This document shows positions 1,404-19,598 of a stretch of 64,000 bases of DNA, piece after piece. A program made the position numbers and the translations under genes. Position 1 is the first letter of the stretch; every line of letters begins with the position of its first letter. The stretch is from sequence record MK327931.1; one strand, written 5' to 3'. A model generated the notes under the pieces. It was not told the origin of the DNA. It saw nothing but the letters and a program-made list of their open reading frames with translations, and made no database searches.

Positions 1404-1487
1404 TAGATACACTCCTGCACCCAGTGGGCTAGTTTTTGTCTATGCGTATATAATAGCAAAGGGACTGACCGGAGTCAATCCCTTTTT
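1404..1487 (-). ncRNA. promoter-driven two-hairpin RNA module, family A copy 1
   Basis: TTGACT-17-TATTAT then TAG-ACAAAAA-CTA, GCCCACTGGGTGCA-GGAG-TGTATCT; no ORF. Confidence 0.6.
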
Positions 1488-1500
1488 TTATTCTTTTTTG

Positions 1501-1701
1501 TTAGATGATTCTCCAATCTTCTACGATCATGGTAAGATAACGGACCATCGATTCAAGTGATTCGAATTCCCGATAGTCTGCCGCTCCACCAGCGGTACAA
1601 GTACAGCCGATTAAACCATTTTGTAATTCCTTAATCTGTACATCGATAAGGTTGGCTTTAGCTTCTTTCAGTACTTCAACCAGGGCGATAGCGATAGACA
1701 T
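1501..1701 (-). CDS. hypothetical early protein (66 aa)
   Basis: GGAG SD; promoter cassette upstream. Confidence 0.8.
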   Translation of the reverse strand: MSIAIALVEVLKEAKANLIDVQIKELQNGLIGCTCTAGGAADYREFESLESMVRYLTMIVEDWRII

Positions 1702-1790
1702 AATGTTTTACTCCAAACTATTGACGGGAGAACTATTCCCCCGCTCTATGTAAAACATTATACATTACTGGTTAGTACTGTCAAATAGTT

Positions 1791-2048
1791 TTATGAAATA
1801 TCTTCGATGTAGTCGGCCCATTTCATTTTTTCAGTACTGTCAATGGCTACCGGATTATTTGGATCAAACCATTCACCATTCCCGCAATACATACCCACGG
1901 CAACGGTTTTATATCCATCCTGTGCAGTACTCCACGACATAGCACGATAGATATGGCCTTTAACTGGTTGCAATACTGGTAATGTTTTATGGTCTTCTAC
2001 GTAGGCCATAGCTTGAGGATTTACCCGATATTGTGTGAACTGTTCCAT
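1791..2048 (-). CDS. hypothetical early protein (85 aa)
   Basis: SD and own promoter. Confidence 0.8.
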   Translation of the reverse strand: MEQFTQYRVNPQAMAYVEDHKTLPVLQPVKGHIYRAMSWSTAQDGYKTVAVGMYCGNGEWFDPNNPVAIDSTEKMKWADYIEDIS

Positions 2049-2124
2049 TATGTTTCCCCTTGTAGTTAGTAAAGTTATTACATCAGTACTATCAAGCTAT
2101 GTCAATAGTACTGAAATAAAACTT

Positions 2125-2349
2125 TTAGATTAGATTATTGATGCCGTTGATGGTAGACTCGCTTTCTTCTTTCTCCCATTGGCGGTAGTACTTCCATGCT
2201 TCATGATATGTGGCGATTAGTTCATCTTTTTGATCCTGAGTACATGCCAGTACTGAATCACGGTGAGCGGTTTTATAGATAGAATCGAATGATTTCTTCT
2301 CTTCTGCCAGGTTAGCTACTTCCCGCATCAGTTCATCAAAGTTAGCCAT
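2125..2349 (-). CDS. hypothetical early protein (74 aa)
   Basis: AAGGAG SD and promoter cassette. Confidence 0.8.
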   Translation of the reverse strand: MANFDELMREVANLAEEKKSFDSIYKTAHRDSVLACTQDQKDELIATYHEAWKYYRQWEKEESESTINGINNLI

Positions 2350-2416
2350 TTTATTACTCCTTTTAGTGGGGGAGGATATCTCCCCCTATGCAAAACATTA
2401 TACTTTGTTTTAGTTA

Positions 2417-2680
2417 TTATGCAAGTACTTTTTTCATATAAAGATTATATTCTACACCGCCGTAACCTTCTACGATGATATGTTTTGCGTTATCACGTTT
2501 GCACATAGTGAAACCGTTGTTGATGTGTTCTGCATTTTCCAGGGCGACATCACCGATAGCGGCACATACGGCACTAATAACAGTATTCCGCAAAGTACTG
2601 GTATCATTAGCGGTCATAGTAGTTTGCAGTACTACGTTGTCGTATACGTGTGCATTGATAGTGATTTCGATAGTGTTCAT
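2417..2680 (-). CDS. hypothetical early protein (87 aa)
   Basis: CAGGAG SD and promoter cassette. Confidence 0.8.
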   Translation of the reverse strand: MNTIEITINAHVYDNVVLQTTMTANDTSTLRNTVISAVCAAIGDVALENAEHINNGFTMCKRDNAKHIIVEGYGGVEYNLYMKKVLA

Positions 2681-2766
2681 GGTGTATCTCCTGGACTGGC
2701 GGGAGAACTATTCCCCCGCTCTATGTAAAACATTATACGTTAATCTAACTACAATGCAAGTACTTT

Positions 2767-2958
2767 TTAAATTTTATTTCCGATATAGTCCGGTCTATTC
2801 TTTTCGGTCATACGCTTTGCTAATGTTTGCATATGGCTTATTGCGTTTAATGTGTCTTCCTCCAGGGATGAATCAACATAATCAGGATCATTCTTCACCT
2901 TGCAATGATTATGATAGCGTAGTACTGCCAGTACTTTTTTAACTTCTTCTACTGTCAT
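2767..2958 (-). CDS. hypothetical early protein (63 aa)
   Basis: ATGA-type coupling with upstream gene. Confidence 0.75.
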   Translation of the reverse strand: MTVEEVKKVLAVLRYHNHCKVKNDPDYVDSSLEEDTLNAISHMQTLAKRMTEKNRPDYIGNKI

Positions 2959-3227
2959 AATAAGTACCCCACTTCGTTAGCTTTCAGGTTAGTATCAATC
3001 ATCAGTGGATTTTTGTAGTTCACAAAACGATTAGTTTTCTCGATAGCGAATCCCATATAATCCAGCTTACTAACAGTACATTCATTCTTAAAAACTTCTT
3101 TCGCTGCATCGATGGCTGATTGCATGGATAACCGACCATCTAAATTAATGTTTCCAAATGATCCACCAGCAGAAGTAGGATTACCGTTCATATCTTTAAT
3201 GATCATAGTAGCGGAGTAGCTGGACAT
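2955..3227 (-). CDS. hypothetical early protein (90 aa)
   Basis: AAGGA SD and promoter cassette. Confidence 0.8.
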   Translation of the reverse strand: MSSYSATMIIKDMNGNPTSAGGSFGNINLDGRLSMQSAIDAAKEVFKNECTVSKLDYMGFAIEKTNRFVNYKNPLMIDTNLKANEVGYLL

Positions 3228-3314
3228 AATTTTGTTTCCTTTTAGTATCGGGGAGAACTATTCTCCCCTTGATGTAAACTATTATACAGTACTGATATAC
3301 TTTGTCAAATACTT

Positions 3315-3722
3315 TTATTCGCCCATATAGATTAAGTTATCATCGCCTACATAGGGATCGCAAACGTTGATTTCTTCGCAGTACTTCGTGAATACATCGC
3401 CATAGTGACCTAAACCACGATCCCAAAAACCAGTTCCGTGACCTTCGCGGGTAAGGAACAGATCATGACCAGCTTGCTCATAACCGTAATCAATAAACAT
3501 ACCGCGAACTACTTCCAGATCATTACCGTGTTTCTCAATGAAGCGAGAACATGCAATCACCGCCGCTTGACGTGCTTCATCAGATAACTCATAATCTTCC
3601 AGGTAATCGCCGTTATCATTATGTACAGTACTGAATTGCATAGCTTCAATGTAAGCTACAACCATTGCAGCATGATTTTTATCGTTAGTGATGTTCCGAG
3701 CGAGATTAGTAGTAGTAGACAT
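3315..3722 (-). CDS. conserved phage hypothetical protein (GHDxxLTRxGHGxGFWDR motif)
   Basis: motif recalled from small phage proteins; own promoter cassette. Confidence 0.8.
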   Translation of the reverse strand: MSTTTNLARNITNDKNHAAMVVAYIEAMQFSTVHNDNGDYLEDYELSDEARQAAVIACSRFIEKHGNDLEVVRGMFIDYGYEQAGHDLFLTREGHGTGFWDRGLGHYGDVFTKYCEEINVCDPYVGDDNLIYMGE

Positions 3723-3805
3723 GATTTTATTCCTTATTGTATTGGGGAGAACTATTCTCCCCTTGATGTAAACTATTATACAGTACTGATATACTTTGTC
3801 AATAC

Positions 3806-4027
3806 TTAATTACGTTTAAAATGATATGTGCCTTTATCATCCTGTACGCCCCACACTGATTTACCATCAACACCAGTGAAACCGGATTGTAATTCAATAT
3901 GGAAACCATTATTATCAACTACAAAAACTTTTTTATTTTCATCCCGATAACATTGATATTCTGAATCAACATTAAAGGCCGCATCATTCAGAAGATTGGA
4001 AGCGTAAATGCAAGTCATTGTAGTCAT
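3806..4027 (-). CDS. hypothetical early protein (73 aa, MTTMTC)
   Basis: start moved to ATG after AAGGA SD. Confidence 0.8.
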   Translation of the reverse strand: MTTMTCIYASNLLNDAAFNVDSEYQCYRDENKKVFVVDNNGFHIELQSGFTGVDGKSVWGVQDDKGTYHFKRN

Positions 4028-4150
4028 GATTTTATTCCTTATTACCAGGGAGAACCATTTCCCCCTCTCTATGTAAAACATTATACTTGATTCTAAGTAC
4101 AATGCAAGTACTTTTTATCAAATAGTTTTCAGTACTGAATACTTATATAA

Positions 4151-4240
4151 TAGATACACTTCCGCACCCTATGGGTCAGTGAGTTATCTCTCAATGAATA
4201 TATAATAGCAAAGGGACTGACCGGAGTCAATCCCTTTTTT
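4151..4240 (-). ncRNA. two-hairpin RNA module, family A copy 2
   Basis: TTGACT-17-TATTAT; TGAG-AGATAA-CTCA; CCCATAGGGTGCG-GAAG-TGTATCT. Confidence 0.6.
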
Positions 4241-4248
4241 AATCTTTT

Positions 4249-4833
4249 TTATCGTGTTACCTTACTTGCTTCTACATCACGCTTTTTATAGTACTGATTC
4301 CAGATATTGCGGGTTAAACCGTAATCAAGTACTTTAATAAGGCCATTACGATCCTGGCCGATATTCTGTTTTCTGATATCTCTTATCGTTAGTGTTGATA
4401 ATGTATCATCAACGTGTTGTAGTGCATCAGCAAAGCGGTGCTGGCGTTCAATGGCATTACGTTTAATATTGTACTTTAATTCATTGCACGCGTTTACGTG
4501 CTTTACACTGCCTTTACTTGCAGTACTCAACCGATCCATAACGATAAACATATTATCAGGATCGCATAAATGCATATGCACCTTTGCAAAGTACTGTTTC
4601 AATTGAGGGCGGTCATAATCTAAAAAATTCCATACCTTACATTCAGTTTCATTTTGTTCTACACCCGCATCACAATTCGCGACCTTGATCACTAACCGAT
4701 CATTTAAAGCGAATACAATACGGGAAGAACCCGCACCGATGATCTCCAGACCAGCTAACCGACAAGCTGAAAGGATCTCTTTGTTGGTTTCCATTTCTGA
4801 CAGGGTACGGATGAATTTAGTATAATTACGCAT
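4249..4833 (-). CDS. Ser/Thr protein kinase-like protein (194 aa)
   Basis: IGAGSSRIVF Gly loop, VIKVA, NETE, DIRKQNIG catalytic loop, LDYG; start after AAGGAG. Confidence 0.75.
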   Translation of the reverse strand: MRNYTKFIRTLSEMETNKEILSACRLAGLEIIGAGSSRIVFALNDRLVIKVANCDAGVEQNETECKVWNFLDYDRPQLKQYFAKVHMHLCDPDNMFIVMDRLSTASKGSVKHVNACNELKYNIKRNAIERQHRFADALQHVDDTLSTLTIRDIRKQNIGQDRNGLIKVLDYGLTRNIWNQYYKKRDVEASKVTR

Positions 4834-4864
4834 TGCATGTTCTCCTTGAGTTAATGAAACTATC

Positions 4865-5107
4865 TTACAGTACTTTACTATCAATGGCAACTACTTTTTT
4901 AACATTAACGGCGTGGATCACCTCCTTAGTGTTTTTAGTACTGAATACTTTCGCCGCCCCATTCACGACCGTGATACGATAGCGACCATTAACATCAACC
5001 ATATTAATAAAGTCCGGCGTGCTGAATGGTGTTGTTTTACATTTGAGTACTGTTAACAATTCCACCAGCGATGTAGTTTCTTTGATACGTTTTTCTAAAG
5101 TAATCAT
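4865..5107 (-). CDS. hypothetical early protein (80 aa)
   Basis: SD; duplicated 60-bp promoter/RBS upstream. Confidence 0.8.
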   Translation of the reverse strand: MITLEKRIKETTSLVELLTVLKCKTTPFSTPDFINMVDVNGRYRITVVNGAAKVFSTKNTKEVIHAVNVKKVVAIDSKVL

Positions 5108-5165
5108 TTTGTTTTTCCCCGTGTTGGTATGTACATATAGTACTAAAACATTTGAGTACTGTCAA

Positions 5166-5384
5166 TTAGATAATATTATATTTCTTAAAATAAAATGCGT
5201 CCTGTGTTGGTTGATACTCAATGCCATTGCCGTTATTGACTTCAACTAATAAACCTTTGTCAATAAGTTTTTTAATAGTACGATACCCTTGTTGAAAATT
5301 GGTAAAATGTGAATCATTACGAAAGGTATAACCGTGCTTAACTGCTTCATCAATAGTTTTCTTTTCGATTTTAGATAATTTCAT
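5166..5384 (-). CDS. hypothetical early protein (72 aa, MKLSKIE)
   Basis: start moved to ATG after GGGAG; same 60-bp promoter/RBS repeat. Confidence 0.8.
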   Translation of the reverse strand: MKLSKIEKKTIDEAVKHGYTFRNDSHFTNFQQGYRTIKKLIDKGLLVEVNNGNGIEYQPTQDAFYFKKYNII

Positions 5385-5437
5385 TTTGTTTCTCCCGTGT
5401 TGGTATATGTACATAGTACTAAAACATTTGAGTACTG

Positions 5438-5692
5438 TCAACGTGATATTAGTTTTATTTTCTTATTATATTGTTGGTGTTCATATAGGTTTATCTTTCC
5501 TGTGTTCTCAATTACTATTCTGTTGTTAGTGTCCACATCGATTACACGCAGTTTCCCGTTGCTTAACTTCCTTGGTAATAGGTTACCATTAATAAACTCA
5601 TTAGCAAGCTGTACGGCCTTTGTGATGATTCTCTTCGGTGCTTTATAGTGTACCCGTAAGATGTTATCTTTATATAGTTGAACCTTAATCAT
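5438..5692 (-). CDS. hypothetical protein, possibly RelE/ParE-like fold (84 aa)
   Basis: pattern KAVQL..F..G...PRKL..G.L...V....RIV......LYEHQQYN resembles a ParE-like family from memory. Confidence 0.6.
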   Translation of the reverse strand: MIKVQLYKDNILRVHYKAPKRIITKAVQLANEFINGNLLPRKLSNGKLRVIDVDTNNRIVIENTGKINLYEHQQYNKKIKLISR

Positions 5693-5753
5693 TTTGTTTG
5701 TCCTATAAAAAAGGCGGGAACTGATCCCGCCGTGTTGTTAGTACTGCAAGTTA

Positions 5754-6149
5754 TTAGATAACCTGGCGGCGTTTACTGAATACTGTTACACGATTACCCT
5801 TACGGTCGTGTCGGATCTCTTTCTGGTTGCGAATCAGTTCACTTGGACGCTTAAGGTTTGCCAGGTGATCCGCGTGAGTCCATGCGGTGTGGTTTACCTG
5901 TACTTTGATATCAGAATCAGCGATAAACTCATCTTGTGCGTCAAGTATTGCCGCCAGCATATCCGCTCGTTTTAGTTCTGCTGCTGTCAGTACTGGCTCA
6001 GGTGAATTCACAATATCAGAGATTTCTTTGAACTGTACGGCCCAGCGTTGACCTTTCGGTGCATCTTTGCCCATGTCTTTAAATGCTGCTCCTTCCTCGC
6101 GTGCAACAATACGGGCAGCTTCACGGGTAGCGTAGAATTTAGTAATCAT
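5754..6149 (-). CDS. hypothetical early protein, paralogue of 17936-18202
   Basis: shares (F/Y)ATRE.AR..AR..GA.FKDMG, G.RWA and DRKGNRVTV. Confidence 0.85.
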   Translation of the reverse strand: MITKFYATREAARIVAREEGAAFKDMGKDAPKGQRWAVQFKEISDIVNSPEPVLTAAELKRADMLAAILDAQDEFIADSDIKVQVNHTAWTHADHLANLKRPSELIRNQKEIRHDRKGNRVTVFSKRRQVI

Positions 6150-6244
6150 GGTATACATCCTATTAGTTGAGATAGTACTACAAGTTAGAGTCTATTATAA
6201 AGTACTATCTGGGCAATGTCAAATAGTACTTTAAATGGATTCTA

Positions 6245-6568
6245 TTACATGTCTTTCTTACGTTTTACATCGTAGTATCGAACTGTAATTTCTTTGTTGA
6301 TCTCTTCCTCGATGCGGTGAATAACTTTTTCTTTCGGGTTGAAACCTATAACGGTTTCTTTAATGATCTCCAAGCCCGTGTATTCGCCTTGTGTACCGTA
6401 ACCGTATGTAAAGGTTTCGTGTCCCAGGTCTTCCCAGCGGTCGCCAATTAACGCTGACACGTAGCAAGAGTGGTAAGTATTGCCGTTCCGATCAGTCCAG
6501 CGATTAACTTTAATGTCAAAGGAGGTTACAATTTTCAGTTCTACTTTCTGGGTAAGGATCATAGCCAT
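6245..6568 (-). CDS. hypothetical early protein, paralogue of 12363-12686
   Basis: shares RWTD..GNTYHSC.VS, E.FTYGY and RKKD. Confidence 0.85.
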   Translation of the reverse strand: MAMILTQKVELKIVTSFDIKVNRWTDRNGNTYHSCYVSALIGDRWEDLGHETFTYGYGTQGEYTGLEIIKETVIGFNPKEKVIHRIEEEINKEITVRYYDVKRKKDM

Positions 6569-6929
6569 TTTTATTTCTCTCTCTTTGTTAGGAGGGGAAC
6601 CATTCCCCTCGCTTGATGTAAACTATTATACAGTACTAAGATACTTTGTCAATACTTATTTTTTGGAAAGTTTACGCATTAATTCTACGCTTTCTTGTGA
6701 ACGTTTTGCTACCTGGCAAGCTGTATGGGCAGTAAACATTTTTGTATAGTCTGACGCTTTGCCACCAAACCGAGCGGCACGTTCACGGGCACTTGGAACT
6801 AATACTATTTCTTTCTTGCAGATAGTGCACTTAGCCATTTTTATTTCTCTCTCTTTGTTAGGAGGGGAACCGTTTCCCCTCACTTGATGTAAACTATTAT
6901 ACAGTACTAAGATACTTTATCAATACTTA
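6563..6929. repeat. about 95-bp near-identical direct repeats (6563-6657, 6833-6929) flanking one gene
   Basis: agccattttt(t)atttctctctctttgttaggaggggaacc...gatgtaaactattatacagtactaagatacttt in both. Confidence 0.9.
6656..6838 (-). CDS. small putative Zn-binding protein (60 aa; CxxC...HxxC)
   Basis: MAKCTIC...AHTACQ; start after GAGAG SD. Confidence 0.75.
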   Translation of the reverse strand: MAKCTICKKEIVLVPSARERAARFGGKASDYTKMFTAHTACQVAKRSQESVELMRKLSKK

Positions 6930-7202
6930 AGTATTGTAAATGTCGTGAATAGTGATAAAGTTTTTACGACCGTAAACCTGCAAATCAATATCAATGTAGT
7001 GCTTATCTAGTACATCCTCGACGCTTAACGCGGTGTCGTGGATATCTTCGTAGAATTGAGGATCTACAATCTTGCTTAAGTCATCCGGCGTTAACTTATC
7101 GTTAAGCCATTGAACCGCCTGGATATCTGCTTCACGTTTCCAGTCTTCCAGGTTAGTAGTCAGTACTTGTTCGATTTCGTTAGCTGTCAGTAGAATCCGC
7201 AT
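6927..7202 (-). CDS. hypothetical acidic early protein (91 aa)
   Basis: AAGGA SD and promoter. Confidence 0.8.
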   Translation of the reverse strand: MRILLTANEIEQVLTTNLEDWKREADIQAVQWLNDKLTPDDLSKIVDPQFYEDIHDTALSVEDVLDKHYIDIDLQVYGRKNFITIHDIYNT

Positions 7203-7271
7203 TTTTATGTTTCCTTATCAGTGGTTGATGTAAGTATTATACTCGTTTACTTTCTATTGTCAAACTATTTT

Positions 7272-7379
7272 ATCAGGGGAGTTTTTCGTATGTCTTACTC
7301 CTGGACTACTTAACAGGGTTACTTATTTCGTTCCCCGTCCTGATGTAAAACATTATACTTGATTCTAAGTACAATGCAA
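7272..7379 (-). ncRNA. promoter-driven 73-nt structured RNA, family B copy 1
   Basis: TTGCAT-17-TATAAT; ATCAGG..CCTGAT ends; GGAGT-AAGACATACGAAAA-ACTCC; no start codon. Confidence 0.6.
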
Positions 7380-7424
7380 GTACTTTTTTAAAAATAGTTT
7401 TCAGTACTAGCCACCAGCAAACAA

Positions 7425-7508
7425 TAGATACATTTATGCACCCTGTGGGCTGATTTGTTTCTATGCGTATATAATAGCAAAGGGACTGACCGGAGTCAAT
7501 CCCTTTTT
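7425..7508 (-). ncRNA. two-hairpin RNA module, family A copy 3
   Basis: TTGACT-17-TATTAT; GCCCACAGGGTGCA-TAAA-TGTATCT. Confidence 0.6.
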
Positions 7509-7517
7509 CAAATATTT

Positions 7518-7667
7518 TTAAACTTCTTTCGGGTTGCGATAGGTGATAGCGTTCGGGTACATTTGTTTAATGTTATTCCATGCCTGGTTAACATTATAAC
7601 CACTTGAGCGAATCAGTTGGTTACTACCGACACCTTGAAACACTACTTCGAATAAGAATTCTTTCAT
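7518..7667 (-). CDS. small hypothetical protein (49 aa, MKEFLFEV)
   Basis: read by hand; GAGGTG SD; coupled to upstream ORF. Confidence 0.7.
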   Translation of the reverse strand: MKEFLFEVVFQGVGSNQLIRSSGYNVNQAWNNIKQMYPNAITYRNPKEV

Positions 7668-7837
7668 GCTTTCACCTCGCTATCTGCTTTACCTTTACGC
7701 CAGGACATTACTAATTGTTCGCGTTGCCATAAGTCGAGTGATACAAAAAGTTTTGCGGTATCACTTTTAGGATACTCGCCAGTAGTACCTAACCGATAAA
7801 ACAGATCTTTCAGTACTGATAATTCTACTTGAATCAT
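7664..7837 (-). CDS. small hypothetical protein (57 aa, MIQVELS)
   Basis: read by hand; CAGGAG SD. Confidence 0.7.
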   Translation of the reverse strand: MIQVELSVLKDLFYRLGTTGEYPKSDTAKLFVSLDLWQREQLVMSWRKGKADSEVKA

Positions 7838-7926: not shown

Positions 7927-7943
7927 AAGCTGTACTCCTTATA

Positions 7944-13302: not shown

Positions 13303-13455
13303 TTAAAGTTTATCAATGATTGATGCCGTTTCATTGATAGTCTTGCCGTGTTTTGCACACGCGATAACTGCTTTAAATTCCTTTGATGACCAATCTTTCT
13401 TGCTGCATACTGACATTACTTGTAAAGTAAAACAATCCAGTTCATAAGTATTCAT
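13303..13455 (-). CDS. small hypothetical protein (50 aa), paralogue of 9421-9564
   Basis: read by hand; GAGGA SD. Confidence 0.7.
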   Translation of the reverse strand: MNTYELDCFTLQVMSVCSKKDWSSKEFKAVIACAKHGKTINETASIIDKL

Positions 13456-13669
13456 CTTTAAATCCTCAGTTAGTTAAGGTGTCTCGCCTTGATGTAATTA
13501 ATTATACGCTAATCTCTTAATCGTGCAAGTACTTTTTATTACTTTTTGCAAAATACTTTAAACGCTCTCAATCGCATTCTAACGACCTTAACTCCACCAG
13601 CTAGGGCGATGTATCAGATAATCAGTTTAATGCGTTAGGCGGTGCTAGTGGACTGGAATACTATAGACA

Positions 13670-13711
13670 CAAAAAAGCCCACTGTTTAAGGTGGGCTAGT
13701 GATTCAGTACT
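13670..13711 (-). terminator. intrinsic terminator, identical to 14406-14447
   Basis: agcccac-cttaaaca-gtgggct plus T6 on minus strand; 42-bp exact duplicate. Confidence 0.85.
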
Positions 13712-13718
13712 TTAATTT

Positions 13719-14201
13719 TTATGCTTCAACTTTGCGATGAGCTTCGATCCATTCCTCGCGAGTCATACCGCTTTCTTTGATAGCGTCCAGTACTACCGCA
13801 ATGCAGTTACCGCGTACAGGAATCAAATGTTCTTCCCCGTTATCAAGTACTACCGCTACACGTTCCTGAATCCATTTTTTAGGCTTAGATTCCGGCTTAT
13901 CTTCACCATACTTAACCGCCAGGGCTTTATGTGCCATTTCCACAACCACTTCCAGATCCAATCCAGACACTGCCGCCTGAATACTTTCAATTGTTGCTTG
14001 TAGTTCTGCTTCACGGGCTTTTTTCTGTTCTTCCAGTTCTGCTACCTTTTTGGCTTGCAGTTCTTTCGCAGTACTGTACGCAATGTTAAAATTGTTGCGT
14101 ACCGCTTTCATGGTATCGCTATCCAGTTCAGCCAGGATTTCTGCCGCTACGTTAGTTTCATTTGCTACCAGTGCTTTGATGAATGATTTTACATTAGCCA
14201 T
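13719..14201 (-). CDS. H-NS/StpA-like protein (160 aa) with divergent DNA-binding loop
   Basis: coiled coil plus GLDLEVVV; C-terminal VLDNGEEHLIPVRGNCIAVVLDAIKESGMTREEWI aligns by eye to H-NS [35 protein letters not shown]. Confidence 0.6.
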   Translation of the reverse strand: MANVKSFIKALVANETNVAAEILAELDSDTMKAVRNNFNIAYSTAKELQAKKVAELEEQKKAREAELQATIESIQAAVSGLDLEVVVEMAHKALAVKYGEDKPESKPKKWIQERVAVVLDNGEEHLIPVRGNCIAVVLDAIKESGMTREEWIEAHRKVEA

Positions 14202-14263
14202 TTTATAAATCCTCAATTAAAGTTTAGTTTACGTTAGATAGTGTATCAAAGTTTTCTCGACGT

Positions 14264-14352
14264 GTCCAGTTTTTCGTTCGACTTACTGGCGGTCTACTTA
14301 GTGCTCCCCGTCTTGATGTAATACATTCTACGCTTTTCTGTGGTAATGTCAA
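14264..14352 (-). promoter_or_regulatory. sigma70 promoter and structured 5' leader (family B RNA motif) of the H-NS-like gene
   Basis: TTGACA-17-TAGAAT; ACATCAAGACGGGGA..TAAGTAG..CCAGT-AAGTCGAACGAAAA-ACTGG. Confidence 0.65.
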
Positions 14353-14405
14353 CTACTTTTTTAAAACTATTTTTAAAGTATCTCAGTACTACGATACTAC
14401 AAAAA

Positions 14406-14447
14406 CAAAAAAGCCCACTGTTTAAGGTGGGCTAGTGATTCAGTACT
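14406..14447 (-). terminator. intrinsic terminator, identical to 13670-13711
   Basis: exact 42-bp duplicate. Confidence 0.85.
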
Positions 14448-14450
14448 AGA

Positions 14451-14750
14451 TTATAAACAGTTAATTACTCCGGTGTGCGTTACTTTCTCAGTATCCATAA
14501 CCGTGACCGATCCACGCTTAGTACTGGCATCATAATAAATTGTGGTGCTACCGTTTTCGTCTTCTTCATGGAACGGGCCGTTTTTAAATGCTTCCGGCTG
14601 GATCTCTAAATCCTTTAATACAATCTCGCCAGTTCTTTCATCGGTCATTGCAACAGTGCACTGAATGAATTTTTCATTACTTACATCTAATGACGCATTA
14701 ACAGCGAAAGAGGAAACAGATAAAGCCAGGGCGATGATTGCAATTTTCAT
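14451..14750 (-). CDS. putative exported protein (99 aa)
   Basis: signal peptide MKIAIIALALSVSSFAVNA. Confidence 0.8.
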   Translation of the reverse strand: MKIAIIALALSVSSFAVNASLDVSNEKFIQCTVAMTDERTGEIVLKDLEIQPEAFKNGPFHEEDENGSTTIYYDASTKRGSVTVMDTEKVTHTGVINCL

Positions 14751-14834
14751 TTGATTATCCTTAGTTACCAGGGGGAACCGCTCCCCCTTGCTATGTAAAA
14801 TATTATACAGTACTAAAAACTAATTGCAAGTACT

Positions 14835-15071
14835 TTATGATTTTTTATAAAACATTTCGGCAGTGATATTTTTACCCGTTGGCTGTACTTTATCCAGAAT
14901 TTTTTGATGCCCTGGCCGTCCAAATGAATATGATCCGTAAACCGTAAACCAGTAGTTACCCTCAGTGTTTACATGTACAGCACAATAGGGAACGCCCCGC
15001 GATTCATCACTAGTAAAGTGTGCTACCGTTCCCGTTACATTCGAAGTCGTTGATTTGATTTGTTCAAGCAT
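14835..15071 (-). CDS. hypothetical early protein (78 aa)
   Basis: AAGGA SD; promoter cassette. Confidence 0.8.
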   Translation of the reverse strand: MLEQIKSTTSNVTGTVAHFTSDESRGVPYCAVHVNTEGNYWFTVYGSYSFGRPGHQKILDKVQPTGKNITAEMFYKKS

Positions 15072-15178
15072 TTTCTTATTCCTTAGTTACCAGGGGAACC
15101 GCTCCCCTATGCAAAACATTATACGCGTTTAAAAACTAATAGCAAGTATTTTAATAAAAAGTATTTGGAAAATAATTG

Positions 15179-15260
15179 TTGACAAGTGCATCCAGTACTG
15201 GCATAATTACTACATCAAGACGAAACAGTCACTAACCCACCGGGTGCATAGATCCGTCTA
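15179..15260 (+). ncRNA. two-hairpin RNA module, family A copy 5 (plus strand)
   Basis: TTGACA-17-CATAAT; GAC-GAAACA-GTC; CCCACCGGGTGCA-TAGA-TCCGTCT; no ORF downstream. Confidence 0.55.
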
Positions 15261-15313
15261 TTAAATGATTCAGTACTGAAAAAGTAACGGGGAGTTATTA
15301 TCTCCCCGCGTTG

Positions 15314-15535
15314 TTATTTTGTAAGGTATAAACAGAAGTCACCTTTATTTGCTACGCCGCCAGTGTAACGCGATGAATAGTTAGAAATATCTTGTACTTC
15401 TGCTATTACCAGTGTATCATCATTCATTTCGTCGCAGAAGCAAACGGCTGGATCTTTTACGCCGATATTGTCGGCATGTTCCCGCATAGATTTAACCAGT
15501 GCTTCCAGTTGAGAAAGAGTAGTGATATTAGCCAT
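15314..15535 (-). CDS. hypothetical early protein (73 aa)
   Basis: start moved to ATG after GAGGA. Confidence 0.8.
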   Translation of the reverse strand: MANITTLSQLEALVKSMREHADNIGVKDPAVCFCDEMNDDTLVIAEVQDISNYSSRYTGGVANKGDFCLYLTK

Positions 15536-15621
15536 TGTATTTTCCTCATTACCAGGGAGAACCATTTCTCCCCTCTATGTAAACTATTATACAGTACTGA
15601 AAACTAATTGCAAGTACTTTT

Positions 15622-15825
15622 TTAATTTAATTGCTTTAAAACATACTCAAAGACACCACGCACATCATTGATCATCGCCTGGCGGTTAGCAGGTAACGCA
15701 TCAGGATCGCCACTATCCCAGGCATTGATAAAACTCCCCAAATCATGATAGATTTTATTCTGTAAGCCGATTAACTGTAATTCTTTTTCTTCAAGCTCTT
15801 TGATGCGGTCGATTAAATCACTCAT
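15622..15825 (-). CDS. hypothetical early protein (67 aa)
   Basis: start moved to ATG after ACTGAGGATTATCTA, the same leader as the upstream gene. Confidence 0.75.
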   Translation of the reverse strand: MSDLIDRIKELEEKELQLIGLQNKIYHDLGSFINAWDSGDPDALPANRQAMINDVRGVFEYVLKQLN

Positions 15826-15842
15826 TAGATAATCCTCAGTAC

Positions 15843-16127
15843 TTAACTGTAAGATCCGCAACGGTCGCAGTAGTGCCCGTCCTCGTCATCGTCAACGAAT
15901 TGACCGACGAAATGATCTACTTTCGCTTTCAGGTTATTATAATCGTTTTCTACTTCATTTAAACGCTTCTGGTAGTATTCCAGTGCTTTAAGATATGCCG
16001 CATCAGCAGTTTTCTCCTGCATAGCTAAATTCATGCCACGCGTTTCATCGTACAGCCAAAAACCATCGGTGCACTGGCTAATAGATAATGACTTGCTTAG
16101 TACTGTATAGTTAATTACTTTACCCAT
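15843..16127 (-). CDS. hypothetical protein, coiled coil plus C-terminal CxxC (94 aa)
   Basis: GAGGA SD; YCDRCG end. Confidence 0.8.
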   Translation of the reverse strand: MGKVINYTVLSKSLSISQCTDGFWLYDETRGMNLAMQEKTADAAYLKALEYYQKRLNEVENDYNNLKAKVDHFVGQFVDDDEDGHYCDRCGSYS

Positions 16128-16219
16128 TAGATAATCCTCAGTAAAGGCGGGAACTATTCCCCGCCTCGATATAAAGTATTATACGTTAATCTAACTACAA
16201 TGCAAGTACTTTTTAAATT

Positions 16220-16486
16220 TTATAATCCTTTTACTGCATCAGGTGCGACTACTCCATCAATGTATTGAACATCGTTTTCAACTTCACGGGCGGCATCATT
16301 CAGCAGATCAAAATTAAATTCCATTTCTTCCAGATCATCGAAATCAGGCTCATAACCATTAATTGTTGAATAAGTCCAAGTACCTTTTTCATAAGTTACG
16401 ACACTTACATCAGGGAAGAAATCTTGCACATGATCCATCGCATCCCGAACCAATTGATGTGCAGTTGTGATATTTAAAGTTTTCAT
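16220..16486 (-). CDS. hypothetical acidic early protein (88 aa)
   Basis: promoter cassette; D/E rich. Confidence 0.8.
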   Translation of the reverse strand: MKTLNITTAHQLVRDAMDHVQDFFPDVSVVTYEKGTWTYSTINGYEPDFDDLEEMEFNFDLLNDAAREVENDVQYIDGVVAPDAVKGL

Positions 16487-16579
16487 TTTGTTGCCCTTTT
16501 AGTGTGAGCGGGGAACCACTCCCCGCCTCGATGTAAAGTATTATACGCTTTTAAACTTAGTTTGCAAGTACTTTTTAAA

Positions 16580-17191
16580 TTAATATGCGATTGATTCTAC
16601 TACGTCATCAATAACATTGAATTGATATTCGTTACCCTCAATCAGTGCCGTAATGTTTTCAGTAGTGAATTGATCCTCATATGCATTCTCTAAATCACGG
16701 TACAACTTGCGGGATAATTCACGAATAGTTTCAGTGAGTAGTTCCTCAAGCTCATTAACTAACGTTTCTTGTTTTGCGGTTAAATCAGTGTAAGCCGATT
16801 CAATGTACCCGCTTACAGTATTCTCATGCGAGTAGTGGGAGTGAGAACGCTTTACACTCATCGCCAAATCATCTTCATTCAGCAGGTGACGGATTGAGCG
16901 ATACTTAGTTAATGCTCTTACCTTGCGTAAAAACTTCACTGCGTCAACGTGGTCAGTACTGATTGATGCACCGTCACCCTGGGACCAAAAACCACTGAAT
17001 TGTATTTCAGCTTCATTAATGCCATATTCCGGTAGTACTGTTTCTTTATAGTATTCAATTTCACTTTCAGAAAAATAATTGTCGTTTGAGTTTTTTTCAC
17101 GTTCCCGAACCAGTTCGATAGCTGACGTTTTTTGTTCTGCGTTCAATTCAGAAAAATCCATAACGAAAGTAGTAGTAGTGATAGTTTTCAT
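16580..17191 (-). CDS. conserved phage hypothetical acidic protein (203 aa; FSGFWSQGDGA motif)
   Basis: ORF track; GAGG SD; own promoter. Confidence 0.85.
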   Translation of the reverse strand: MKTITTTTFVMDFSELNAEQKTSAIELVREREKNSNDNYFSESEIEYYKETVLPEYGINEAEIQFSGFWSQGDGASISTDHVDAVKFLRKVRALTKYRSIRHLLNEDDLAMSVKRSHSHYSHENTVSGYIESAYTDLTAKQETLVNELEELLTETIRELSRKLYRDLENAYEDQFTTENITALIEGNEYQFNVIDDVVESIAY

Positions 17192-17259
17192 TTTGTAACC
17201 CTCATTCAGTAGTTGATGTAAGTATTATACGCTTTTAAAAACATTTGTCAAACTATTTT

Positions 17260-17369
17260 ATCAGGGGAGTTTTTCGTGTGCCTTACTCCTGGGCTACTTA
17301 ACGGGAAGTTACTTATTTCGTTCCCCGTCCTGATGTAAAACATTATACGCCTTTAAACATAGTTTGCAA
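17260..17369 (-). ncRNA. promoter-driven 75-nt structured RNA, family B copy 2
   Basis: near-identical to 7272-7346; TAAC/GTTA stem with variable loop; GGAGT-AAGGCACACGAAAA-ACTCC. Confidence 0.6.
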
Positions 17370-17414
17370 GTACTTTTTAAAAATAGTTTTCAGTACTGAA
17401 TATTTAAAAAAGTA

Positions 17415-17488
17415 TTGACAGCATTATCAAGTACTGGCATAATATACCCCATGACAACAGCTAACCCACCGGGTGCACAATTGTAACT
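17415..17488 (+). ncRNA. two-hairpin RNA module, family A copy 6 (plus strand)
   Basis: TTGACA-17-CATAAT; CCCACCGGGTGCA-CAAT-TGTAACT. Confidence 0.55.
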
Positions 17489-17508
17489 ATACTAAACTAC
17501 TTTTTCTA

Positions 17509-17587
17509 TAGATACACTCCCGCACCCTATGGGCTACGGCTTATCTGCCAATGAATACATTATGCCAGTACTGACAAAATAAGTCAA
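17509..17587 (-). ncRNA. two-hairpin RNA module, family A copy 7, convergent with copy 6
   Basis: TTGACT-17-CATAAT; GGC-AGATAA-GCC; GCCCATAGGGTGCG-GGAG-TGTATCT. Confidence 0.6.
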
Positions 17588-17617
17588 TACCGGCAATTGT
17601 AAAGATTTGTAAACTGC

Positions 17618-17848
17618 TTATACTGCAATCGCGTCCAGGCTATAATAATAATAAGTGCCGTATTGGTGTACTTTATTACCTTTTATTTCAGTACTGAATG
17701 AATCCGAACGGTTTGCATATGATGTTAATTTAAAGTACTTTGATTTGCTGATACGTTGCCATACACCGCAGATCCGCTGTAAGTAAGTAGTTTTATTCGT
17801 GGTAGTATCTTTTACAGTTTTAACTTCAGTCATATACATATTAGTCAT
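17618..17848 (-). CDS. hypothetical early protein (76 aa)
   Basis: GGAG SD; promoter cassette. Confidence 0.8.
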   Translation of the reverse strand: MTNMYMTEVKTVKDTTTNKTTYLQRICGVWQRISKSKYFKLTSYANRSDSFSTEIKGNKVHQYGTYYYYSLDAIAV

Positions 17849-17935
17849 TTTTATTACTCCAGGTTATAGGCGGGAAGAGTTCCCGCTCTCGATGTAAAAC
17901 ATTATACGCCATTAAACATAGTTTGCAAGTACTTT

Positions 17936-18202
17936 TTATTCAAGTACTGCAATCTTTTTAGTACGGTACACGGTCACGCGGTTGCCCTTTCGGTCGAGCT
18001 TTATTTCTACCACTCGACGCGATACACTATCAGGACTTTTCAACGCCGCTAACCAGTACTGTAATGATCTGGCGGTACTACGCTTTATAATGGCCCAACG
18101 TTTACCACGTTCCGATTGTACGCCCATATCTTTAAACGTTGCCCCGTCCTGGCGTGCGGCGATCCGAGCTTGTTCACGCGTCGCAAAATACTTAATATTC
18201 AT
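17936..18202 (-). CDS. hypothetical early protein, paralogue of 5754-6149
   Basis: shared motifs; start at MNIKYF. Confidence 0.8.
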   Translation of the reverse strand: MNIKYFATREQARIAARQDGATFKDMGVQSERGKRWAIIKRSTARSLQYWLAALKSPDSVSRRVVEIKLDRKGNRVTVYRTKKIAVLE

Positions 18203-18287
18203 GCTGTTGCCCTTATCGTTGGTGTATGAATAAAACACTATTATAAAGTACTATCGCAAAAAATGATAGTACTTTAAATAAATTCTA

Positions 18288-18527
18288 TTACATTCCAACC
18301 ATTGCAGCACGGATCGCAGTAGTGCTATATTTGAATCCGTCCGGCGTTTTATCTTGTCCAGTCTGTTCTAAAAATAACATCATATGACGGGCCGCATCAT
18401 TACGATTAGTATTGGCGGCAATAAAGTCCTGGGCCAACCGGTATAATGATTCATCGTTATTAATCCAAAGGCTTACATTCCAATGAGTTTTGTTTTTGTG
18501 ACCTAAGAACATTTTTGATTTAGCCAT
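18288..18527 (-). CDS. conserved phage hypothetical protein (79 aa; THWNVSLWINND motif)
   Basis: start moved to ATG after GAGGA. Confidence 0.8.
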   Translation of the reverse strand: MAKSKMFLGHKNKTHWNVSLWINNDESLYRLAQDFIAANTNRNDAARHMMLFLEQTGQDKTPDGFKYSTTAIRAAMVGM

Positions 18528-18620
18528 TTTTTTAATCCTCTTATATAGTGGGGAACTATTCCCCACCTGATGTAAAACATTATACGCTTTTAAACATAGT
18601 TTGCAAGTACTTTATTAAAC

Positions 18621-18983
18621 TTATTCGTAAATTTTGCCACTGTCAGCCCATACCAGGAAACGAGGCATATTATCCCATGCATCTTGTTTTAAATTTAAAC
18701 CGTGTAATACTTCTGTACTTTCCATTCCTGGTACTGGTTTACTATACACCGCGAAATTTTCGCCCATATACTGATAAACCATCGTCAAATCACTGGCGAT
18801 CATCTTATGGATCATCGCATCAAGCATCACGGTAGCGGCGTATTGTTCACGCTTAAGCGGCAACATTGTAATAAGTTCCCGATAAGCTGAAATGTGAATT
18901 TTTACCGTTTCAGCCGGAAGACCTTTCATCTCTTCACGGAAGTTGACCAGGTTAGAAATAATTTTATTGATTTGGGTCGCCAT
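18621..18983 (-). CDS. hypothetical early protein (120 aa)
   Basis: start moved to MATQIN; first promoter cassette of the zone at 19007-19072. Confidence 0.75.
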   Translation of the reverse strand: MATQINKIISNLVNFREEMKGLPAETVKIHISAYRELITMLPLKREQYAATVMLDAMIHKMIASDLTMVYQYMGENFAVYSKPVPGMESTEVLHGLNLKQDAWDNMPRFLVWADSGKIYE

Positions 18984-19302
18984 CGTATTAATCTCTTTTA
19001 AAGTGTAGCGGGAAGTGTTCCCGCTCTCGATGTAAAACATTATACGCCTTTAAACATAGTTTGCAAGTACTTTCTACATGTACTTTTAAAATAGTTTTCT
19101 TTCTATATAGGGGAACTATCATTCAGTACTATTATTCAGTACTGAATCAACCAAATCACTACTACACCCCATAAAACGGCCTCAGACGCATTCTAACGCA
19201 TTAATACACCTAAGCTATACATTTGCACCATTCCAATCATTCCAGGGCTTTACGGGCCGTTTAAACGCGTTAAATTATTTTCAATTATTTTGTTTTTAGC
19301 TA

Positions 19303-19382
19303 TTGACTCAGTACAGAAAAAGCGTATAATTACTACATAGACGCGAGAAAGCGGAAACCCCAGAGGGTGCGGAATTACGCCC
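19303..19382 (+). ncRNA. two-hairpin RNA module, family A copy 8
   Basis: TTGACT-16-TATAAT; CGC-GAGAAA-GCG; CCCAGAGGGTGCG-GAAT-TACGCCC. Confidence 0.55.
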
Positions 19383-19402
19383 AAAATTCAAGATATAAAA
19401 AA

Positions 19403-19485
19403 AGGATACACTCCCGCACCCTAGCAGGTAAACGCACTTTCTCAGTACTGAAATATAGTACCATAGTCCGGCCCAGGATAGCAAG
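19403..19485 (-). ncRNA. degenerate family A copy 9, convergent with copy 8
   Basis: GGGTGCG-GGAG-TGTATCC hairpin; weak promoter upstream. Confidence 0.4.
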
Positions 19486-19518
19486 CAAATTAATTAAAAC
19501 TTTTTTGCTTCCAGGGTA

Positions 19519-19598
19519 TTGCTTTATTTTTTCAGTACTGTATAATAGTTCCATCAAGTCGAGAAAGACTCAAGCCCACCGGGTGCATAGTTACGCCC
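19519..19598 (+). ncRNA. two-hairpin RNA module, family A copy 10
   Basis: TTGCTT-16-TATAAT; GTC-GAGAAA-GAC; GCCCACCGGGTGCA-TAGT-TACGCCC. Confidence 0.55.

What the first reader, a model, noticed from the sequence alone, without database searches (positions are those of the whole stretch)
1404..19598. Ten promoter-proximal two-hairpin RNA modules with covarying stems (put-like antiterminators or decoy RNAs)
Seen: ten near-consensus sigma70 promoters with no ORF behind them (minus: 1404, 4151, 7425, 10708, 17509, 19403; plus: 15179, 17415, 19303, 19519). Each transcript begins with hairpin 1, whose stem changes but keeps pairing (TGAG/CTCA, GGC/GCC, TAG/CTA, CGC/GCG, GTC/GAC, GAC/GTC) around a purine-rich 6-7 nt loop. 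A nearly invariant CCCA(C/T)N follows, then hairpin 2: GGGTGC(A/G)-4-nt loop-TGTATCT or TACGCCC, with a fixed 5' arm and a compensating 3' arm. CCCA could also pair with GGG, giving an alternative fold. Established: HK022 put RNAs are two stem-loops just downstream of early promoters that bind the RNAP beta' zinc finger and suppress termination without a protein factor. Inference: this is either a multi-copy RNA device that modifies host RNAP, or a protein-sponge/anti-defence RNA. I know of no description of it.
Basis: partly seen in the sequence, partly recalled or inferred. Interest (0 to 1): 0.88.

Follow-up and report, generated by a model that had tools for sequence, protein, structure and literature searches.

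The report
Repeated early-promoter RNA module, jumbo phage
The 20.7-kb terminal repeat of the jumbo coliphage G17 carries nine (plus one decayed) copies of a strong host-type promoter fused to a ~50-nt structured RNA; this RNA is conserved across the RaK2-like jumbo phages, matches no described RNA family, and has an unknown function.

Summary
The window is the left end of Escherichia phage vB_EcoM_G17, and bases 1-20668 are its direct terminal repeat.

- **Copies:** nine units lie between 1399 and 19604. Each is a sigma70-type promoter followed at a fixed distance by a ~48-nt module. A tenth (19403-19470, minus) is a remnant.
- **Spread:** a covariance model finds 7-13 copies in each stretch examined from relatives in four named genera. 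One complete 350-kb relative has none outside its early block. Rfam, E. coli genomes and bacterial genomes hold nothing comparable.
- **Structure:** hairpin 1 covaries strongly.
- **Error:** "no ORF behind them" fails for the five minus-strand copies. Genes start 117-313 nt downstream, behind a second promoter.
- **Orientation:** 31% of copies point against the genes. Many form convergent pairs with a fixed 9-nt gap.

This argues against a purely put-like antiterminator. I favour self-contained immediate-early non-coding RNA units displaying one protein-binding hairpin (confidence 0.35). The function remains untested.

The parts
1399..1478 (-). Unit 1. Promoter 1450-1478, with its -35 inside the terminator hairpin 1458-1485. 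Module 1399-1442, with a short 3-bp hairpin 1. Sense to gene G17_00003, which starts at 1254.
   Evidence: (37.2 bits)
4146..4230 (-). Unit 2. Promoter 4202-4230, with its -35 inside the terminator hairpin 4210-4237. Module 4146-4193. Sense to G17_00011, which starts at 4027.
   Evidence: (58.5 bits)
7420..7499 (-). Unit 3. Promoter 7471-7499, with its -35 inside the terminator hairpin 7479-7506. Module 7420-7463, with a degenerate hairpin 1. Sense to G17_00019, which starts at 7202.
   Evidence: (33.6 bits)
10703..10787 (-). Unit 4. Promoter 10759-10787, with its -35 inside the terminator hairpin 10767-10794. Module 10703-10750. Sense to G17_00031, which starts at 10586.
   Evidence: (56.9 bits)
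15179..15265 (+). Unit 5. Promoter 15179-15207. Module 15218-15265. Antisense to the local genes; it runs into the hairpin 15288-15308 that ends G17_00045.
   Evidence: (52.8 bits)
17415..17494 (+). Unit 6. Promoter 17415-17443. Module 17451-17494, with a degenerate hairpin 1. Antisense. Convergent partner of unit 7, with a 9-nt gap.
   Evidence: (23.7 bits, E 1.2e-3)
17504..17587 (-). Unit 7. Promoter 17559-17587. Module 17504-17550. Sense to G17_00049, which starts at 17191.
   Evidence: (53.4 bits)
19303..19388 (+). Unit 8. Promoter 19303-19330. Module 19341-19388 (the core reads CCCAGA). Antisense. Faces the remnant copy.
   Evidence: (52.0 bits)
19519..19604 (+). Unit 9. Promoter-like TTGCTT...TATAAT from 19519, read by eye. 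Module 19557-19604. Points into the non-coding stretch at the inner edge of the terminal repeat.
   Evidence: 55.1 bits
19403..19470 (-). Remnant tenth copy. Only the hairpin-2 part (19404-19423) followed by seven T, which is terminator-like. It keeps the 9-nt pair geometry with unit 8.
   Evidence: (15 bits, E 0.21)
1..20668 (.). Direct terminal repeat of phage G17. It contains every copy of the module.
   Evidence: identical to record 350150-370817, 0 mismatches; PMC6563267

Best explanation
**Proposal.** Each unit is a self-contained, immediate-early, non-coding transcription unit. Host RNA polymerase with sigma70 starts at the strong promoter, at the A of a conserved CAT. The first ~50 nt of the RNA fold into two parts.

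1. **Hairpin 1.** It lies at the 5' end. Its sequence is free but its pairing is kept. I infer that it serves as a clamp protecting the 5' end.
2. **An almost invariant core.** It forms a small hairpin: purine-CCC, a 3-4-nt loop, then GGG-U. The same GGGU(G) can instead pair with pyrimidine/purine-restricted bases about 12 nt downstream, giving the G·U-rich hairpin 2.

I propose that the core hairpin is a binding site for one protein, of the host or of the phage. The 9-10 units per terminal repeat (about 20 per genome) would make this RNA in bulk in the first minutes of infection, to titrate or recruit that protein. What lies downstream of a unit would be secondary: a gene that has its own promoter, a terminator, or a facing unit.

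**Shown:** the units, their promoters, the pairing patterns, their conservation, their restriction to the terminal repeat, and their mixed orientation.
**Inferred:** that the units are transcribed, the 5'-clamp role, and protein binding in trans.
**Unknown:** the partner protein.
For: - **One RNA strand is under selection.**
  - Hairpin 1: all four pairs show changes on both sides, with 90.6% and 91.6% of cells paired in two independent sets; 0 of 500 shuffles reach the covariation score, and slid partners give 27-56% paired. There are 48 distinct stem variants in 109 distinct copies.
  - Loci sharing the same downstream protein family carry different paired stems: TGAG/CTCA, TGGC/GCCG, TCCA/TGGA.
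  - Core hairpin: C-G 106 and U-A 3 with no mismatch at the loop-proximal pair; the outer pair is A-U 60 and G·U 47. RNAalifold predicts it on its own.
- **The units do not depend on downstream genes.**
  - 22 of 70 copies are antisense to the local genes.
  - Antisense single copies in the Klebsiella phages run into two-way terminators within about 45 nt.
  - There are 16 convergent pairs.
  - The genes after sense copies in the window have their own promoters.
- **Dosage and timing.**
  - There are 9 copies in 19 kb and none in the other 330 kb of a complete relative, and none in window 20-64 kb.
  - All copies lie in the terminal repeat. In the distant relative PA5oct, the terminal repeat is highly transcribed early (PMC7318152).
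- **The same core occurs in all copies and genera.** GGGTGC is found in 95 of 109 copies, and CCCACA, CCCATA or CCCACC in 88 of 109. This is what a shared ligand would require.
- **Both folds are weak.** Mean energies are -3.8 and -3.6 kcal/mol. That is typical of protein-recognition hairpins rather than stand-alone structures.
Against: - There are no expression data of any kind for these units.
- No partner protein has been identified.
- Sense copies have no terminator before the next promoter, so they need not give a discrete small RNA.
- Copies are kept at matching loci across genera. A pure dosage model does not require that; it would fit a local, cis role.
- 69% of copies are co-oriented with the genes, which is more than chance would give.
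- In convergent pairs the core would be buried in a long perfect duplex once the full transcript is made. That is odd for a displayed binding site.
- The position is fixed relative to the transcription start. This also fits an action on the polymerase that is making the RNA.
Confidence: 0.35

Rival explanations
1. A cis-acting element of the nascent RNA that changes the polymerase making it. This would be processive antitermination or anti-pausing, either put-like (RNA alone) or nut-like (hairpin 1 with its purine-rich loop, plus the conserved core, recruiting a phage or host factor). Transcripts from these promoters would then cross the many terminators of the early region.
For: - The module always occupies about +3 to +50 of the transcript.
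- 48 of 70 copies are co-oriented with the genes.
- The early region is full of predicted intrinsic terminators: 11 annotated on the minus strand in 20 kb and 23 terminator-like sites against 12.8 expected.
- Copies are kept at matching loci upstream of the same gene families across genera.
- The repeat encodes a DksA/TraR-type zinc-finger protein (Pfam E = 1e-11), so polymerase is a target of this region.
- The two competing folds could act as the RNA emerges.
Against: - 31% of copies are antisense, with nothing to express.
- Antisense copies in K64-1, Muenster and the unnamed Klebsiella phage are followed at once by hairpins with a T-run on the module's side. That only makes sense if those transcripts stop there.
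- Convergent pairs have a fixed geometry.
- In the window, only 8-9 of the roughly 45 strong promoters carry the module, and the downstream genes have their own promoters.
- Size and architecture differ from put (PMC9378689).
- No N-like protein has been identified.
Confidence: 0.22
2. A regulatory cassette of the PeSL type: a terminator stem-loop plus an early promoter, which restarts transcription between gene modules and serves as a recombination point for shuffling small early genes. On this view the transcribed module is mainly a 5' stabiliser of the restarted RNA, and the mixed orientation comes from inversions between the flanking palindromic AGTACT sites.
For: - Four window copies have their -35 inside the terminator hairpin of the upstream gene. 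The same arrangement appears in Klebsiella, Yersinia, Serratia and Cronobacter phages.
- PeSLs are composite stem-loop and sigma70-promoter motifs in regions of small variable genes of T4-like phages (PMC4122927).
- The gene content of this region varies strongly among close relatives: only 32-79% of the 20 kb is covered in most Asteriusvirus genomes.
- Inverted copies sit in the same kind of intergenic slot, between AGTACT-containing palindromes.
Against: - A stabiliser or recombination role does not explain the following:
  - a core conserved almost to the base across genera, together with compensatory changes;
  - the exact 9-nt spacing of convergent pairs whose spacer sequences differ.
- PeSLs are followed directly by a Shine-Dalgarno sequence and a start codon. 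Here a conserved RNA and a second promoter intervene.
Confidence: 0.15
3. An element that acts through DNA or through the act of transcription. Examples are primer or R-loop promoters for replication of the terminal repeat, transcription-assisted entry of the DNA, or a protein-binding inverted repeat, with the convergent pair as the full site and single copies as half sites.
For: - Restriction to the terminal repeat.
- Convergent pairs with an invariant spacing behave like one symmetric DNA element.
- Pairs cluster near the non-coding, repeat-bearing stretch at the inner edge of the repeat, where the GC skew changes sign.
- An A+T-rich tract follows each module.
Against: - Three of the five supported pairs of hairpin 2 are usually G·U, and 47 of 109 closing pairs of the core hairpin are G·U. 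These pair only in RNA of this strand.
- Compensatory changes in single copies of a multi-copy site are not expected for a protein-binding DNA palindrome.
- Copies point both ways, so they cannot all draw DNA inward.
Confidence: 0.1

Closest known systems
HK022 put RNAs (putL, putR)
   Same: Structured RNA with two stem-loops encoded just downstream of early sigma70 promoters of a coliphage. A possible action on host RNA polymerase without the need for a protein.
   Different: - put is about 70 nt, with two long stem-loops and a triplex, and occurs twice per genome, always upstream of the operons it serves (PMC9378689).
- The G17 module is about 48 nt with two very short hairpins and occurs 9-10 times per repeat.
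- One third of copies are antisense, some sit directly before terminators, and many form convergent pairs.
- No sequence or structural homology was shown.
Lambda-type nut sites (boxA plus boxB)
   Same: A small hairpin with a purine-rich loop, next to a conserved short sequence, near the start of early transcripts.
   Different: - The order is reversed: the hairpin comes first.
- The loop is 6-8 nt and variable.
- The conserved part is itself a hairpin.
- There are many copies in both orientations.
- No N-like protein has been identified.
PeSL cassettes of T4-like phages (promoter-early stem-loops; PMC2839356, PMC4122927)
   Same: A composite of a terminator stem-loop and a sigma70-type early promoter, repeated between small variable early genes, with probable rearrangement at these sites.
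   Different: - In a PeSL the stem-loop lies just upstream of the promoter, and a Shine-Dalgarno sequence and start codon follow.
- Here the -35 lies inside the stem.
- A conserved, covarying ~48-nt RNA and then a second promoter follow.
Non-coding RNAs of the terminal repeat of jumbo phage PA5oct (ncRNA001/002; PMC7318152)
   Same: Non-coding, highly transcribed units inside the long terminal repeat of a distantly related jumbo phage that uses host polymerase.
   Different: Those RNAs are 236-451 nt and single-copy, with no known promoters. The G17 model finds nothing in that region.

Membership tests
HK022 put RNA | An RNA of about 70 nt with two long stem-loops in a V shape, the first forming a triplex (PMC9378689) | tested here: not met
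   The module is about 48 nt. Hairpin 1 has 4 bp. The core hairpin has 4 bp, or hairpin 2 has 5-7 bp.
HK022 put RNA | Lies downstream of an early promoter and upstream of the terminators and genes it serves, in cis | tested here: inconclusive
   All copies are promoter-proximal. However, 22 of 70 are antisense to the genes, and some are followed at once by terminators.
HK022 put RNA | Binds the zinc-binding domain of the polymerase beta' subunit and suppresses pausing and termination | not testable with these tools
   No biochemical or expression data are available.
HK022 put RNA | Sequence or structure homology to putL/putR | not tested
   No put sequence was fetched. Rfam gave no match on any module, even at E up to 5.
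Lambda-type nut site | A boxB hairpin with a conserved purine-rich loop bound by an N-type protein, plus a linear boxA | tested here: inconclusive
   The hairpin-1 loops are purine-rich but vary in length (6-8 nt) and in sequence. No N-like protein was sought or found. The proteins downstream of the modules have no known function.
PeSL cassette (T4-like phages) | A terminator-like stem-loop joined to a sigma70-type early promoter, repeated among small variable genes | tested here: met
   Four window copies have their -35 inside a 12-bp terminator hairpin. The same is seen in other genera. The region consists of small genes of unknown function.
PeSL cassette (T4-like phages) | The promoter is followed directly by the Shine-Dalgarno sequence and start codon of the next gene (PMC4122927) | tested here: not met
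   A conserved 48-nt module and a second promoter lie between. Genes start 117-313 nt after the module.
Any Rfam 15 family | Reaches the family's gathering score, or at least gives a weak match over the module | tested here: not met
   There are 0 matches at gathering thresholds in the 64 kb. The 4 weak matches at E up to 5 in 1-21000 do not overlap any module.
Terminated small RNA (promoter, body, intrinsic terminator) | A discrete 3' end at an intrinsic terminator | tested here: inconclusive
   Present for antisense single copies in K64-1, Muenster and the unnamed Klebsiella phage. Weak in window unit 5. Absent for sense copies.
RNA mimic of a host sequence (for example a CRISPR-repeat decoy) | Sequence similarity to host DNA | tested here: not met
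   blastn of an 81-nt unit against 5,426 E. coli genomes gives no match at E up to 1. This is sensitive only to matches of roughly 20 nt or more.

The most novel reading that the evidence does not exclude
The RaK2-like jumbo phages carry a previously unrecognised class of immediate-early RNA. It is made from about 20 strong host-type promoters per genome. Its near-invariant, two-state core hairpin captures or reprogrammes a central host machine, either RNA polymerase itself or a major RNA-binding protein. The fixed-geometry convergent pairs would be a second functional form, giving a long hairpin RNA from either strand.
Probability: 0.3. Interest if true: 0.85.

Novelty: new variant of a known kind. 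Interest (0 to 1): 0.66.

Why it matters
- **Biology of these phages.** Almost nothing is known about how RaK2-like jumbo phages (Asteriusvirus, Alcyoneusvirus, Eneladusvirus, Mimasvirus and relatives) take over their hosts. Several are being considered for therapy against E. coli and Klebsiella.
- **An unannotated conserved feature.** This RNA element sits on a specific subset of the first promoters to be used, shows clear covariation, and is conserved across the relatives examined. It is therefore one of the few non-protein features of these genomes that is visibly under selection, and current annotations miss it completely.
- **If it acts on polymerase or titrates a host protein.** It would be a new example of RNA-based host takeover.
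- **If it is only a stabiliser cassette.** It would still explain the layout of the early region and improve annotation of about 200 genomes.

Tried and rejected
- **Rfam.** Searches at gathering thresholds and at E up to 5 found nothing on the modules. No tRNA or tmRNA is present.
- **Host mimicry.** blastn against E. coli genomes gave no match.
- **Bacterial genomes.** An exact-pattern scan gave only single scattered hits in unrelated taxa. By my own arithmetic (about 32 bits of pattern over 596 Gb, both strands) this is roughly the chance number.
- **Viral contigs.**
  - The multi-copy matches come from 345-378-kb contigs, several with the record lengths of RaK2-like phages, plus one 109-kb fragment.
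  - The model hit 16 of the 20 stretches I re-searched.
  - The single pattern matches on four other contigs (13.9, 32.5, 53.6 and 608 kb) had no model hit, so I treat them as chance.
- **PA5oct.** Its terminal-repeat non-coding RNAs show no model hit.
- **Literature.** Searches on Asteriusvirus, phAPEC6, RaK2, GAP32, CBB and jumbo-phage non-coding RNAs found RpoD-like early promoters described (PMC5259590) but no such RNA.
- **Ideas considered and dropped.**
  - Pairing between the hairpin-1 loop AGATA and the hairpin-2 3' arm TATCT. It is present only in one subfamily and does not covary.
  - A tiny ORF started from the GGAG in the hairpin-2 loop. The loop is not conserved.
  - A DNA palindrome bound by a dimeric protein. 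G·U pairs and single-copy compensatory changes speak against it.
  - A specific gene family always downstream. The downstream proteins fall into many unrelated families of unknown function.
- **MAFFT alignment.** On its own it misaligned hairpin 1. I therefore used a gap-free subset to seed the model.

Full report
**Identity and setting**

The first 20 kb of the window are 100% identical to the start of Escherichia phage vB_EcoM_G17 (MK327931.1, Asteriusvirus, 370,817 bp), a RaK2-like jumbo phage. Window bases 1-20668 are identical, with no mismatch, to record positions 350150-370817. They are therefore the direct terminal repeat of about 20 kb reported for this phage (PMC6563267). The repeat holds 53 annotated small genes, all on the minus strand and nearly all of unknown function. 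There are no tRNAs and no Rfam matches.

**Check of the observation**

- The 12-mer CCCAYNGGGTGC is found exactly at eight sites and with one mismatch at a ninth, all between 1417 and 19586.
- I aligned six copies that share the same geometry and built a covariance model with hairpin 1 (4 pairs) and hairpin 2 (7 pairs).
- With filters off, the model finds the same nine sites in the 64 kb (58.5 to 23.7 bits) and nothing else of note. The claimed tenth copy matches only in its hairpin-2 part (15 bits, E = 0.21).
- Eight of the nine promoters appear in the promoter scan with 10 or 11 of 12 consensus positions. The ninth (19519) I read by eye.
- "No ORF behind them" does not hold for the five minus-strand copies. 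Annotated genes start 117-313 nt after the module, and a second sigma70-type promoter of the form TTGCAA-16-TATAAT, followed by a leader hairpin and a ribosome-binding site, lies in between.
- The region holds many more strong promoters, including 11 perfect 12-of-12 matches on the minus strand. The module therefore marks a special subset.
- In four copies the -35 hexamer lies inside the 12-bp terminator hairpin of the upstream gene.

**Distribution**

- A 71-nt unit finds matches in 60 phage records from Escherichia, Salmonella, Klebsiella, Yersinia, Serratia, Erwinia and Cronobacter phages.
- At E up to 1e-3, the model finds 7 to 13 copies in each stretch fetched from K64-1, Muenster, an unnamed Klebsiella phage, Yersinia phage fHe-Yen9-03, Serratia phage BF, Cronobacter phage GAP32 and coliphage TH47.
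- It finds 62 more copies in the stretches fetched from IMG/VR contigs. These include the 378-kb contig, whose length matches the size reported for phage CBB (PMC5259590).
- In 350 kb of the 352-kb relative EC22.5-2, all nine copies lie within one 19-kb block.
- Bacterial genomes give only scattered single pattern matches, at about the chance number by my arithmetic. E. coli genomes give none.
- The terminal-repeat region of the distant jumbo phage PA5oct that holds its two RNA-seq-defined non-coding RNAs gives none.

**Promoter link**

Of 114 distinct copies with a full upstream flank, 108 have a promoter match of at least 9 of 12, against 12% of random control positions. In 105 of these 108, the -10 hexamer ends 26-28 or 31-36 nt before the first G of GGGTGC. 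The two distance classes differ by a 4-nt shorter hairpin 1. The module therefore occupies roughly +3 to +50 of the predicted transcript in every genus.

**Structure**

- **Hairpin 1.** All four pairs show changes on both sides, with all four Watson-Crick pair types. For example, the second pair is G-C 35, C-G 13, A-U 4, U-A 3. Paired cells are 90.6% in the first set and 91.6% in the independent second set. No shuffle of 500 reaches the covariation score, and slid partners give 27-56% paired.
  - There are 48 distinct stem variants among 109 distinct copies.
  - These alignments were fitted to the model, which favours the structure. The pairing is nevertheless plain in the raw rows.
  - Loci that share the same downstream protein family carry different paired stems: TGAG/CTCA in the window, TGGC/GCCG in K64-1, TCCA/TGGA in fHe-Yen9-03.
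- **Core.** GGGTGC occurs in 95 of 109 copies. The six bases before it read CCCACA in 47, CCCATA in 32 and CCCACC in 9. Two mutually exclusive helices use its GGG.
  - **Core hairpin (purine-CCC, loop, GGG-U).** RNAalifold predicts this fold by itself.
    - The loop-proximal pair is C-G in 106 copies and U-A in 3. These three are double changes, in a Yersinia phage, the 378-kb contig and an uncultured contig. There is no mismatch at this pair.
    - The outer pair is A-U in 60, G·U in 47 and unpaired in 2.
The five outer pairs are 94-100% paired in both sets.
    - All changes are one-sided: G·U to G-C, or U-A to U·G.
    - Two positions of the 3' arm vary only by transitions (T 83/C 26 and A 75/G 34). 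The next position is G 55, A 26, C 28.
    - The two inner pairs are often unpaired.
  - **Stability.** The two folds are about equally weak, at -3.8 and -3.6 kcal/mol on average.
- **Conclusion on structure.** Because so many pairs are G·U, the selected structure is in RNA of this strand, not in DNA.

**Context**

By the strand of the surrounding long ORFs, 48 of 70 copies are sense and 22 antisense. In the window the split is 5 sense and 4 antisense, counting unit 6. Three settings recur.

- **(a) Sense.** Upstream terminator and promoter, then the module, an AGTACTG palindrome, a second promoter, a leader, and the gene.
- **(b) Antisense single copies.** These run within about 45 nt into the hairpin that ends the converging gene. 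In the Klebsiella phages that hairpin has a T-run on both sides.
- **(c) Convergent pairs.** There are 16 pairs in the sets examined. In 13 of them the two 48-nt model hits are exactly 9 nt apart, although the spacer sequences differ. The window pair 17451-17494 / 17504-17550 has the same 9-nt gap. The pair of unit 8 with the remnant copy has it too, if the remnant's 20-nt partial hit is extended to model length. A transcript crossing a pair would fold into a long, nearly perfect hairpin (-29 to -50 kcal/mol, z about -5).

**Interpretation**

- A purely cis antiterminator of the put type does not account for the antisense copies, the terminators placed right after them, the convergent pairs, or the separate promoters of the downstream genes. 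Size and architecture also differ from put (PMC9378689).
- A PeSL-type terminator-promoter cassette (PMC4122927) describes the DNA layout well. It does not explain the near-invariant, compensating RNA core.
- I therefore favour self-contained immediate-early non-coding units, whose 5' hairpin protects the RNA and whose core hairpin is a shared binding site for a protein. They would be made in bulk from about 20 promoters per genome.
- The points against this view are listed under the best explanation, and my confidence is only 0.35. The cis-acting reading remains a live rival at 0.22.
- No step beyond sequence conservation has been shown. Transcription itself is inferred from promoter quality and from the early, heavy transcription of terminal repeats in PA5oct (PMC7318152).

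**Novelty**

Nothing in Rfam 15, and nothing in the papers I could find on CBB, phAPEC6, G17, PA5oct or PeSLs, describes this module. The CBB paper notes RpoD-like early promoters with UP-like elements in the region of small genes and in the terminal repeat, but no RNA element.

I stopped when I noticed.

Noticed in passing
whole window; e.g. 4130-4137, 15271-15278, 17391-17398, 19605-19612: The hexamer AGTACT occurs 282 times in 64 kb, against roughly 22 expected from base composition (my arithmetic). Density is 12.0 per kb in intergenic DNA and 3.9 per kb in coding DNA of 1-19040. It often appears as CAGTACTG or TTCAGTACTGAA. It lies in promoter spacers, just 5' of -35 elements, 25-83 nt before start codons, and a few bases 3' of most modules. 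It may be the site of a phage transcription regulator or a DNA-modification or recognition site.
   Followed up: partly
window 19041-20933: A 1.9-kb non-coding stretch spans the inner edge of the terminal repeat (20668). It holds 16-nt and 32-nt direct repeats at 19770-19865 and many AGTACTG sites, and the GC skew changes sign near 20 kb. It is a candidate replication origin, packaging site or DNA-entry control region.
   Followed up: partly
window 1458-1485, 4210-4237, 7479-7506, 10767-10794 (minus): These are terminator hairpins of 12 bp whose 5' arm contains the -35 hexamer (TTGACT) of the next promoter, with the T-run lying in the spacer. The same design appears in Klebsiella, Yersinia, Serratia and Cronobacter relatives.
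   Followed up: partly
window 7225-7365 and 17215-17365 (minus): A second repeated non-coding unit of about 105 nt, 90% identical between its two copies. It is transcribed from a TTGCA-type promoter and followed by a perfect TTGACA-16-TATAAT promoter. It may be another non-coding RNA.
   Followed up: partly
window 1000-20900, minus strand: There are eleven perfect 12-of-12 sigma70 consensus promoters (TTGACA, 16-17 nt, TATAAT) and many 10-11-of-12 matches, roughly one per gene. Most lack the module.
   Followed up: no
window 4040-4075, 10596-10625, 15080-15112 (minus): The leaders of the second promoters share a G/C-rich hairpin (GGGG...CCCC type) directly before the ribosome-binding site.
   Followed up: no
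window 8861-9118 (minus): The terminal repeat encodes a DksA/TraR-type C4 zinc-finger protein (Pfam PF01258, E = 1e-11). It may bind the secondary channel of host RNA polymerase. The protein at 4249-4833 has weak protein-kinase matches, below the Pfam threshold.
   Followed up: partly
L006 (GAP32) 3771-3875, 6599-6704, 22880-22985; L005 (BF) 3416-3520; L004 2551-2656; window 17451-17550: Convergent module pairs keep exactly 9 nt between the 48-nt model hits in 13 of 16 pairs, even though the spacer sequences differ. The pair therefore behaves as one symmetric element that would give a similar long-hairpin RNA from either strand.
   Followed up: partly
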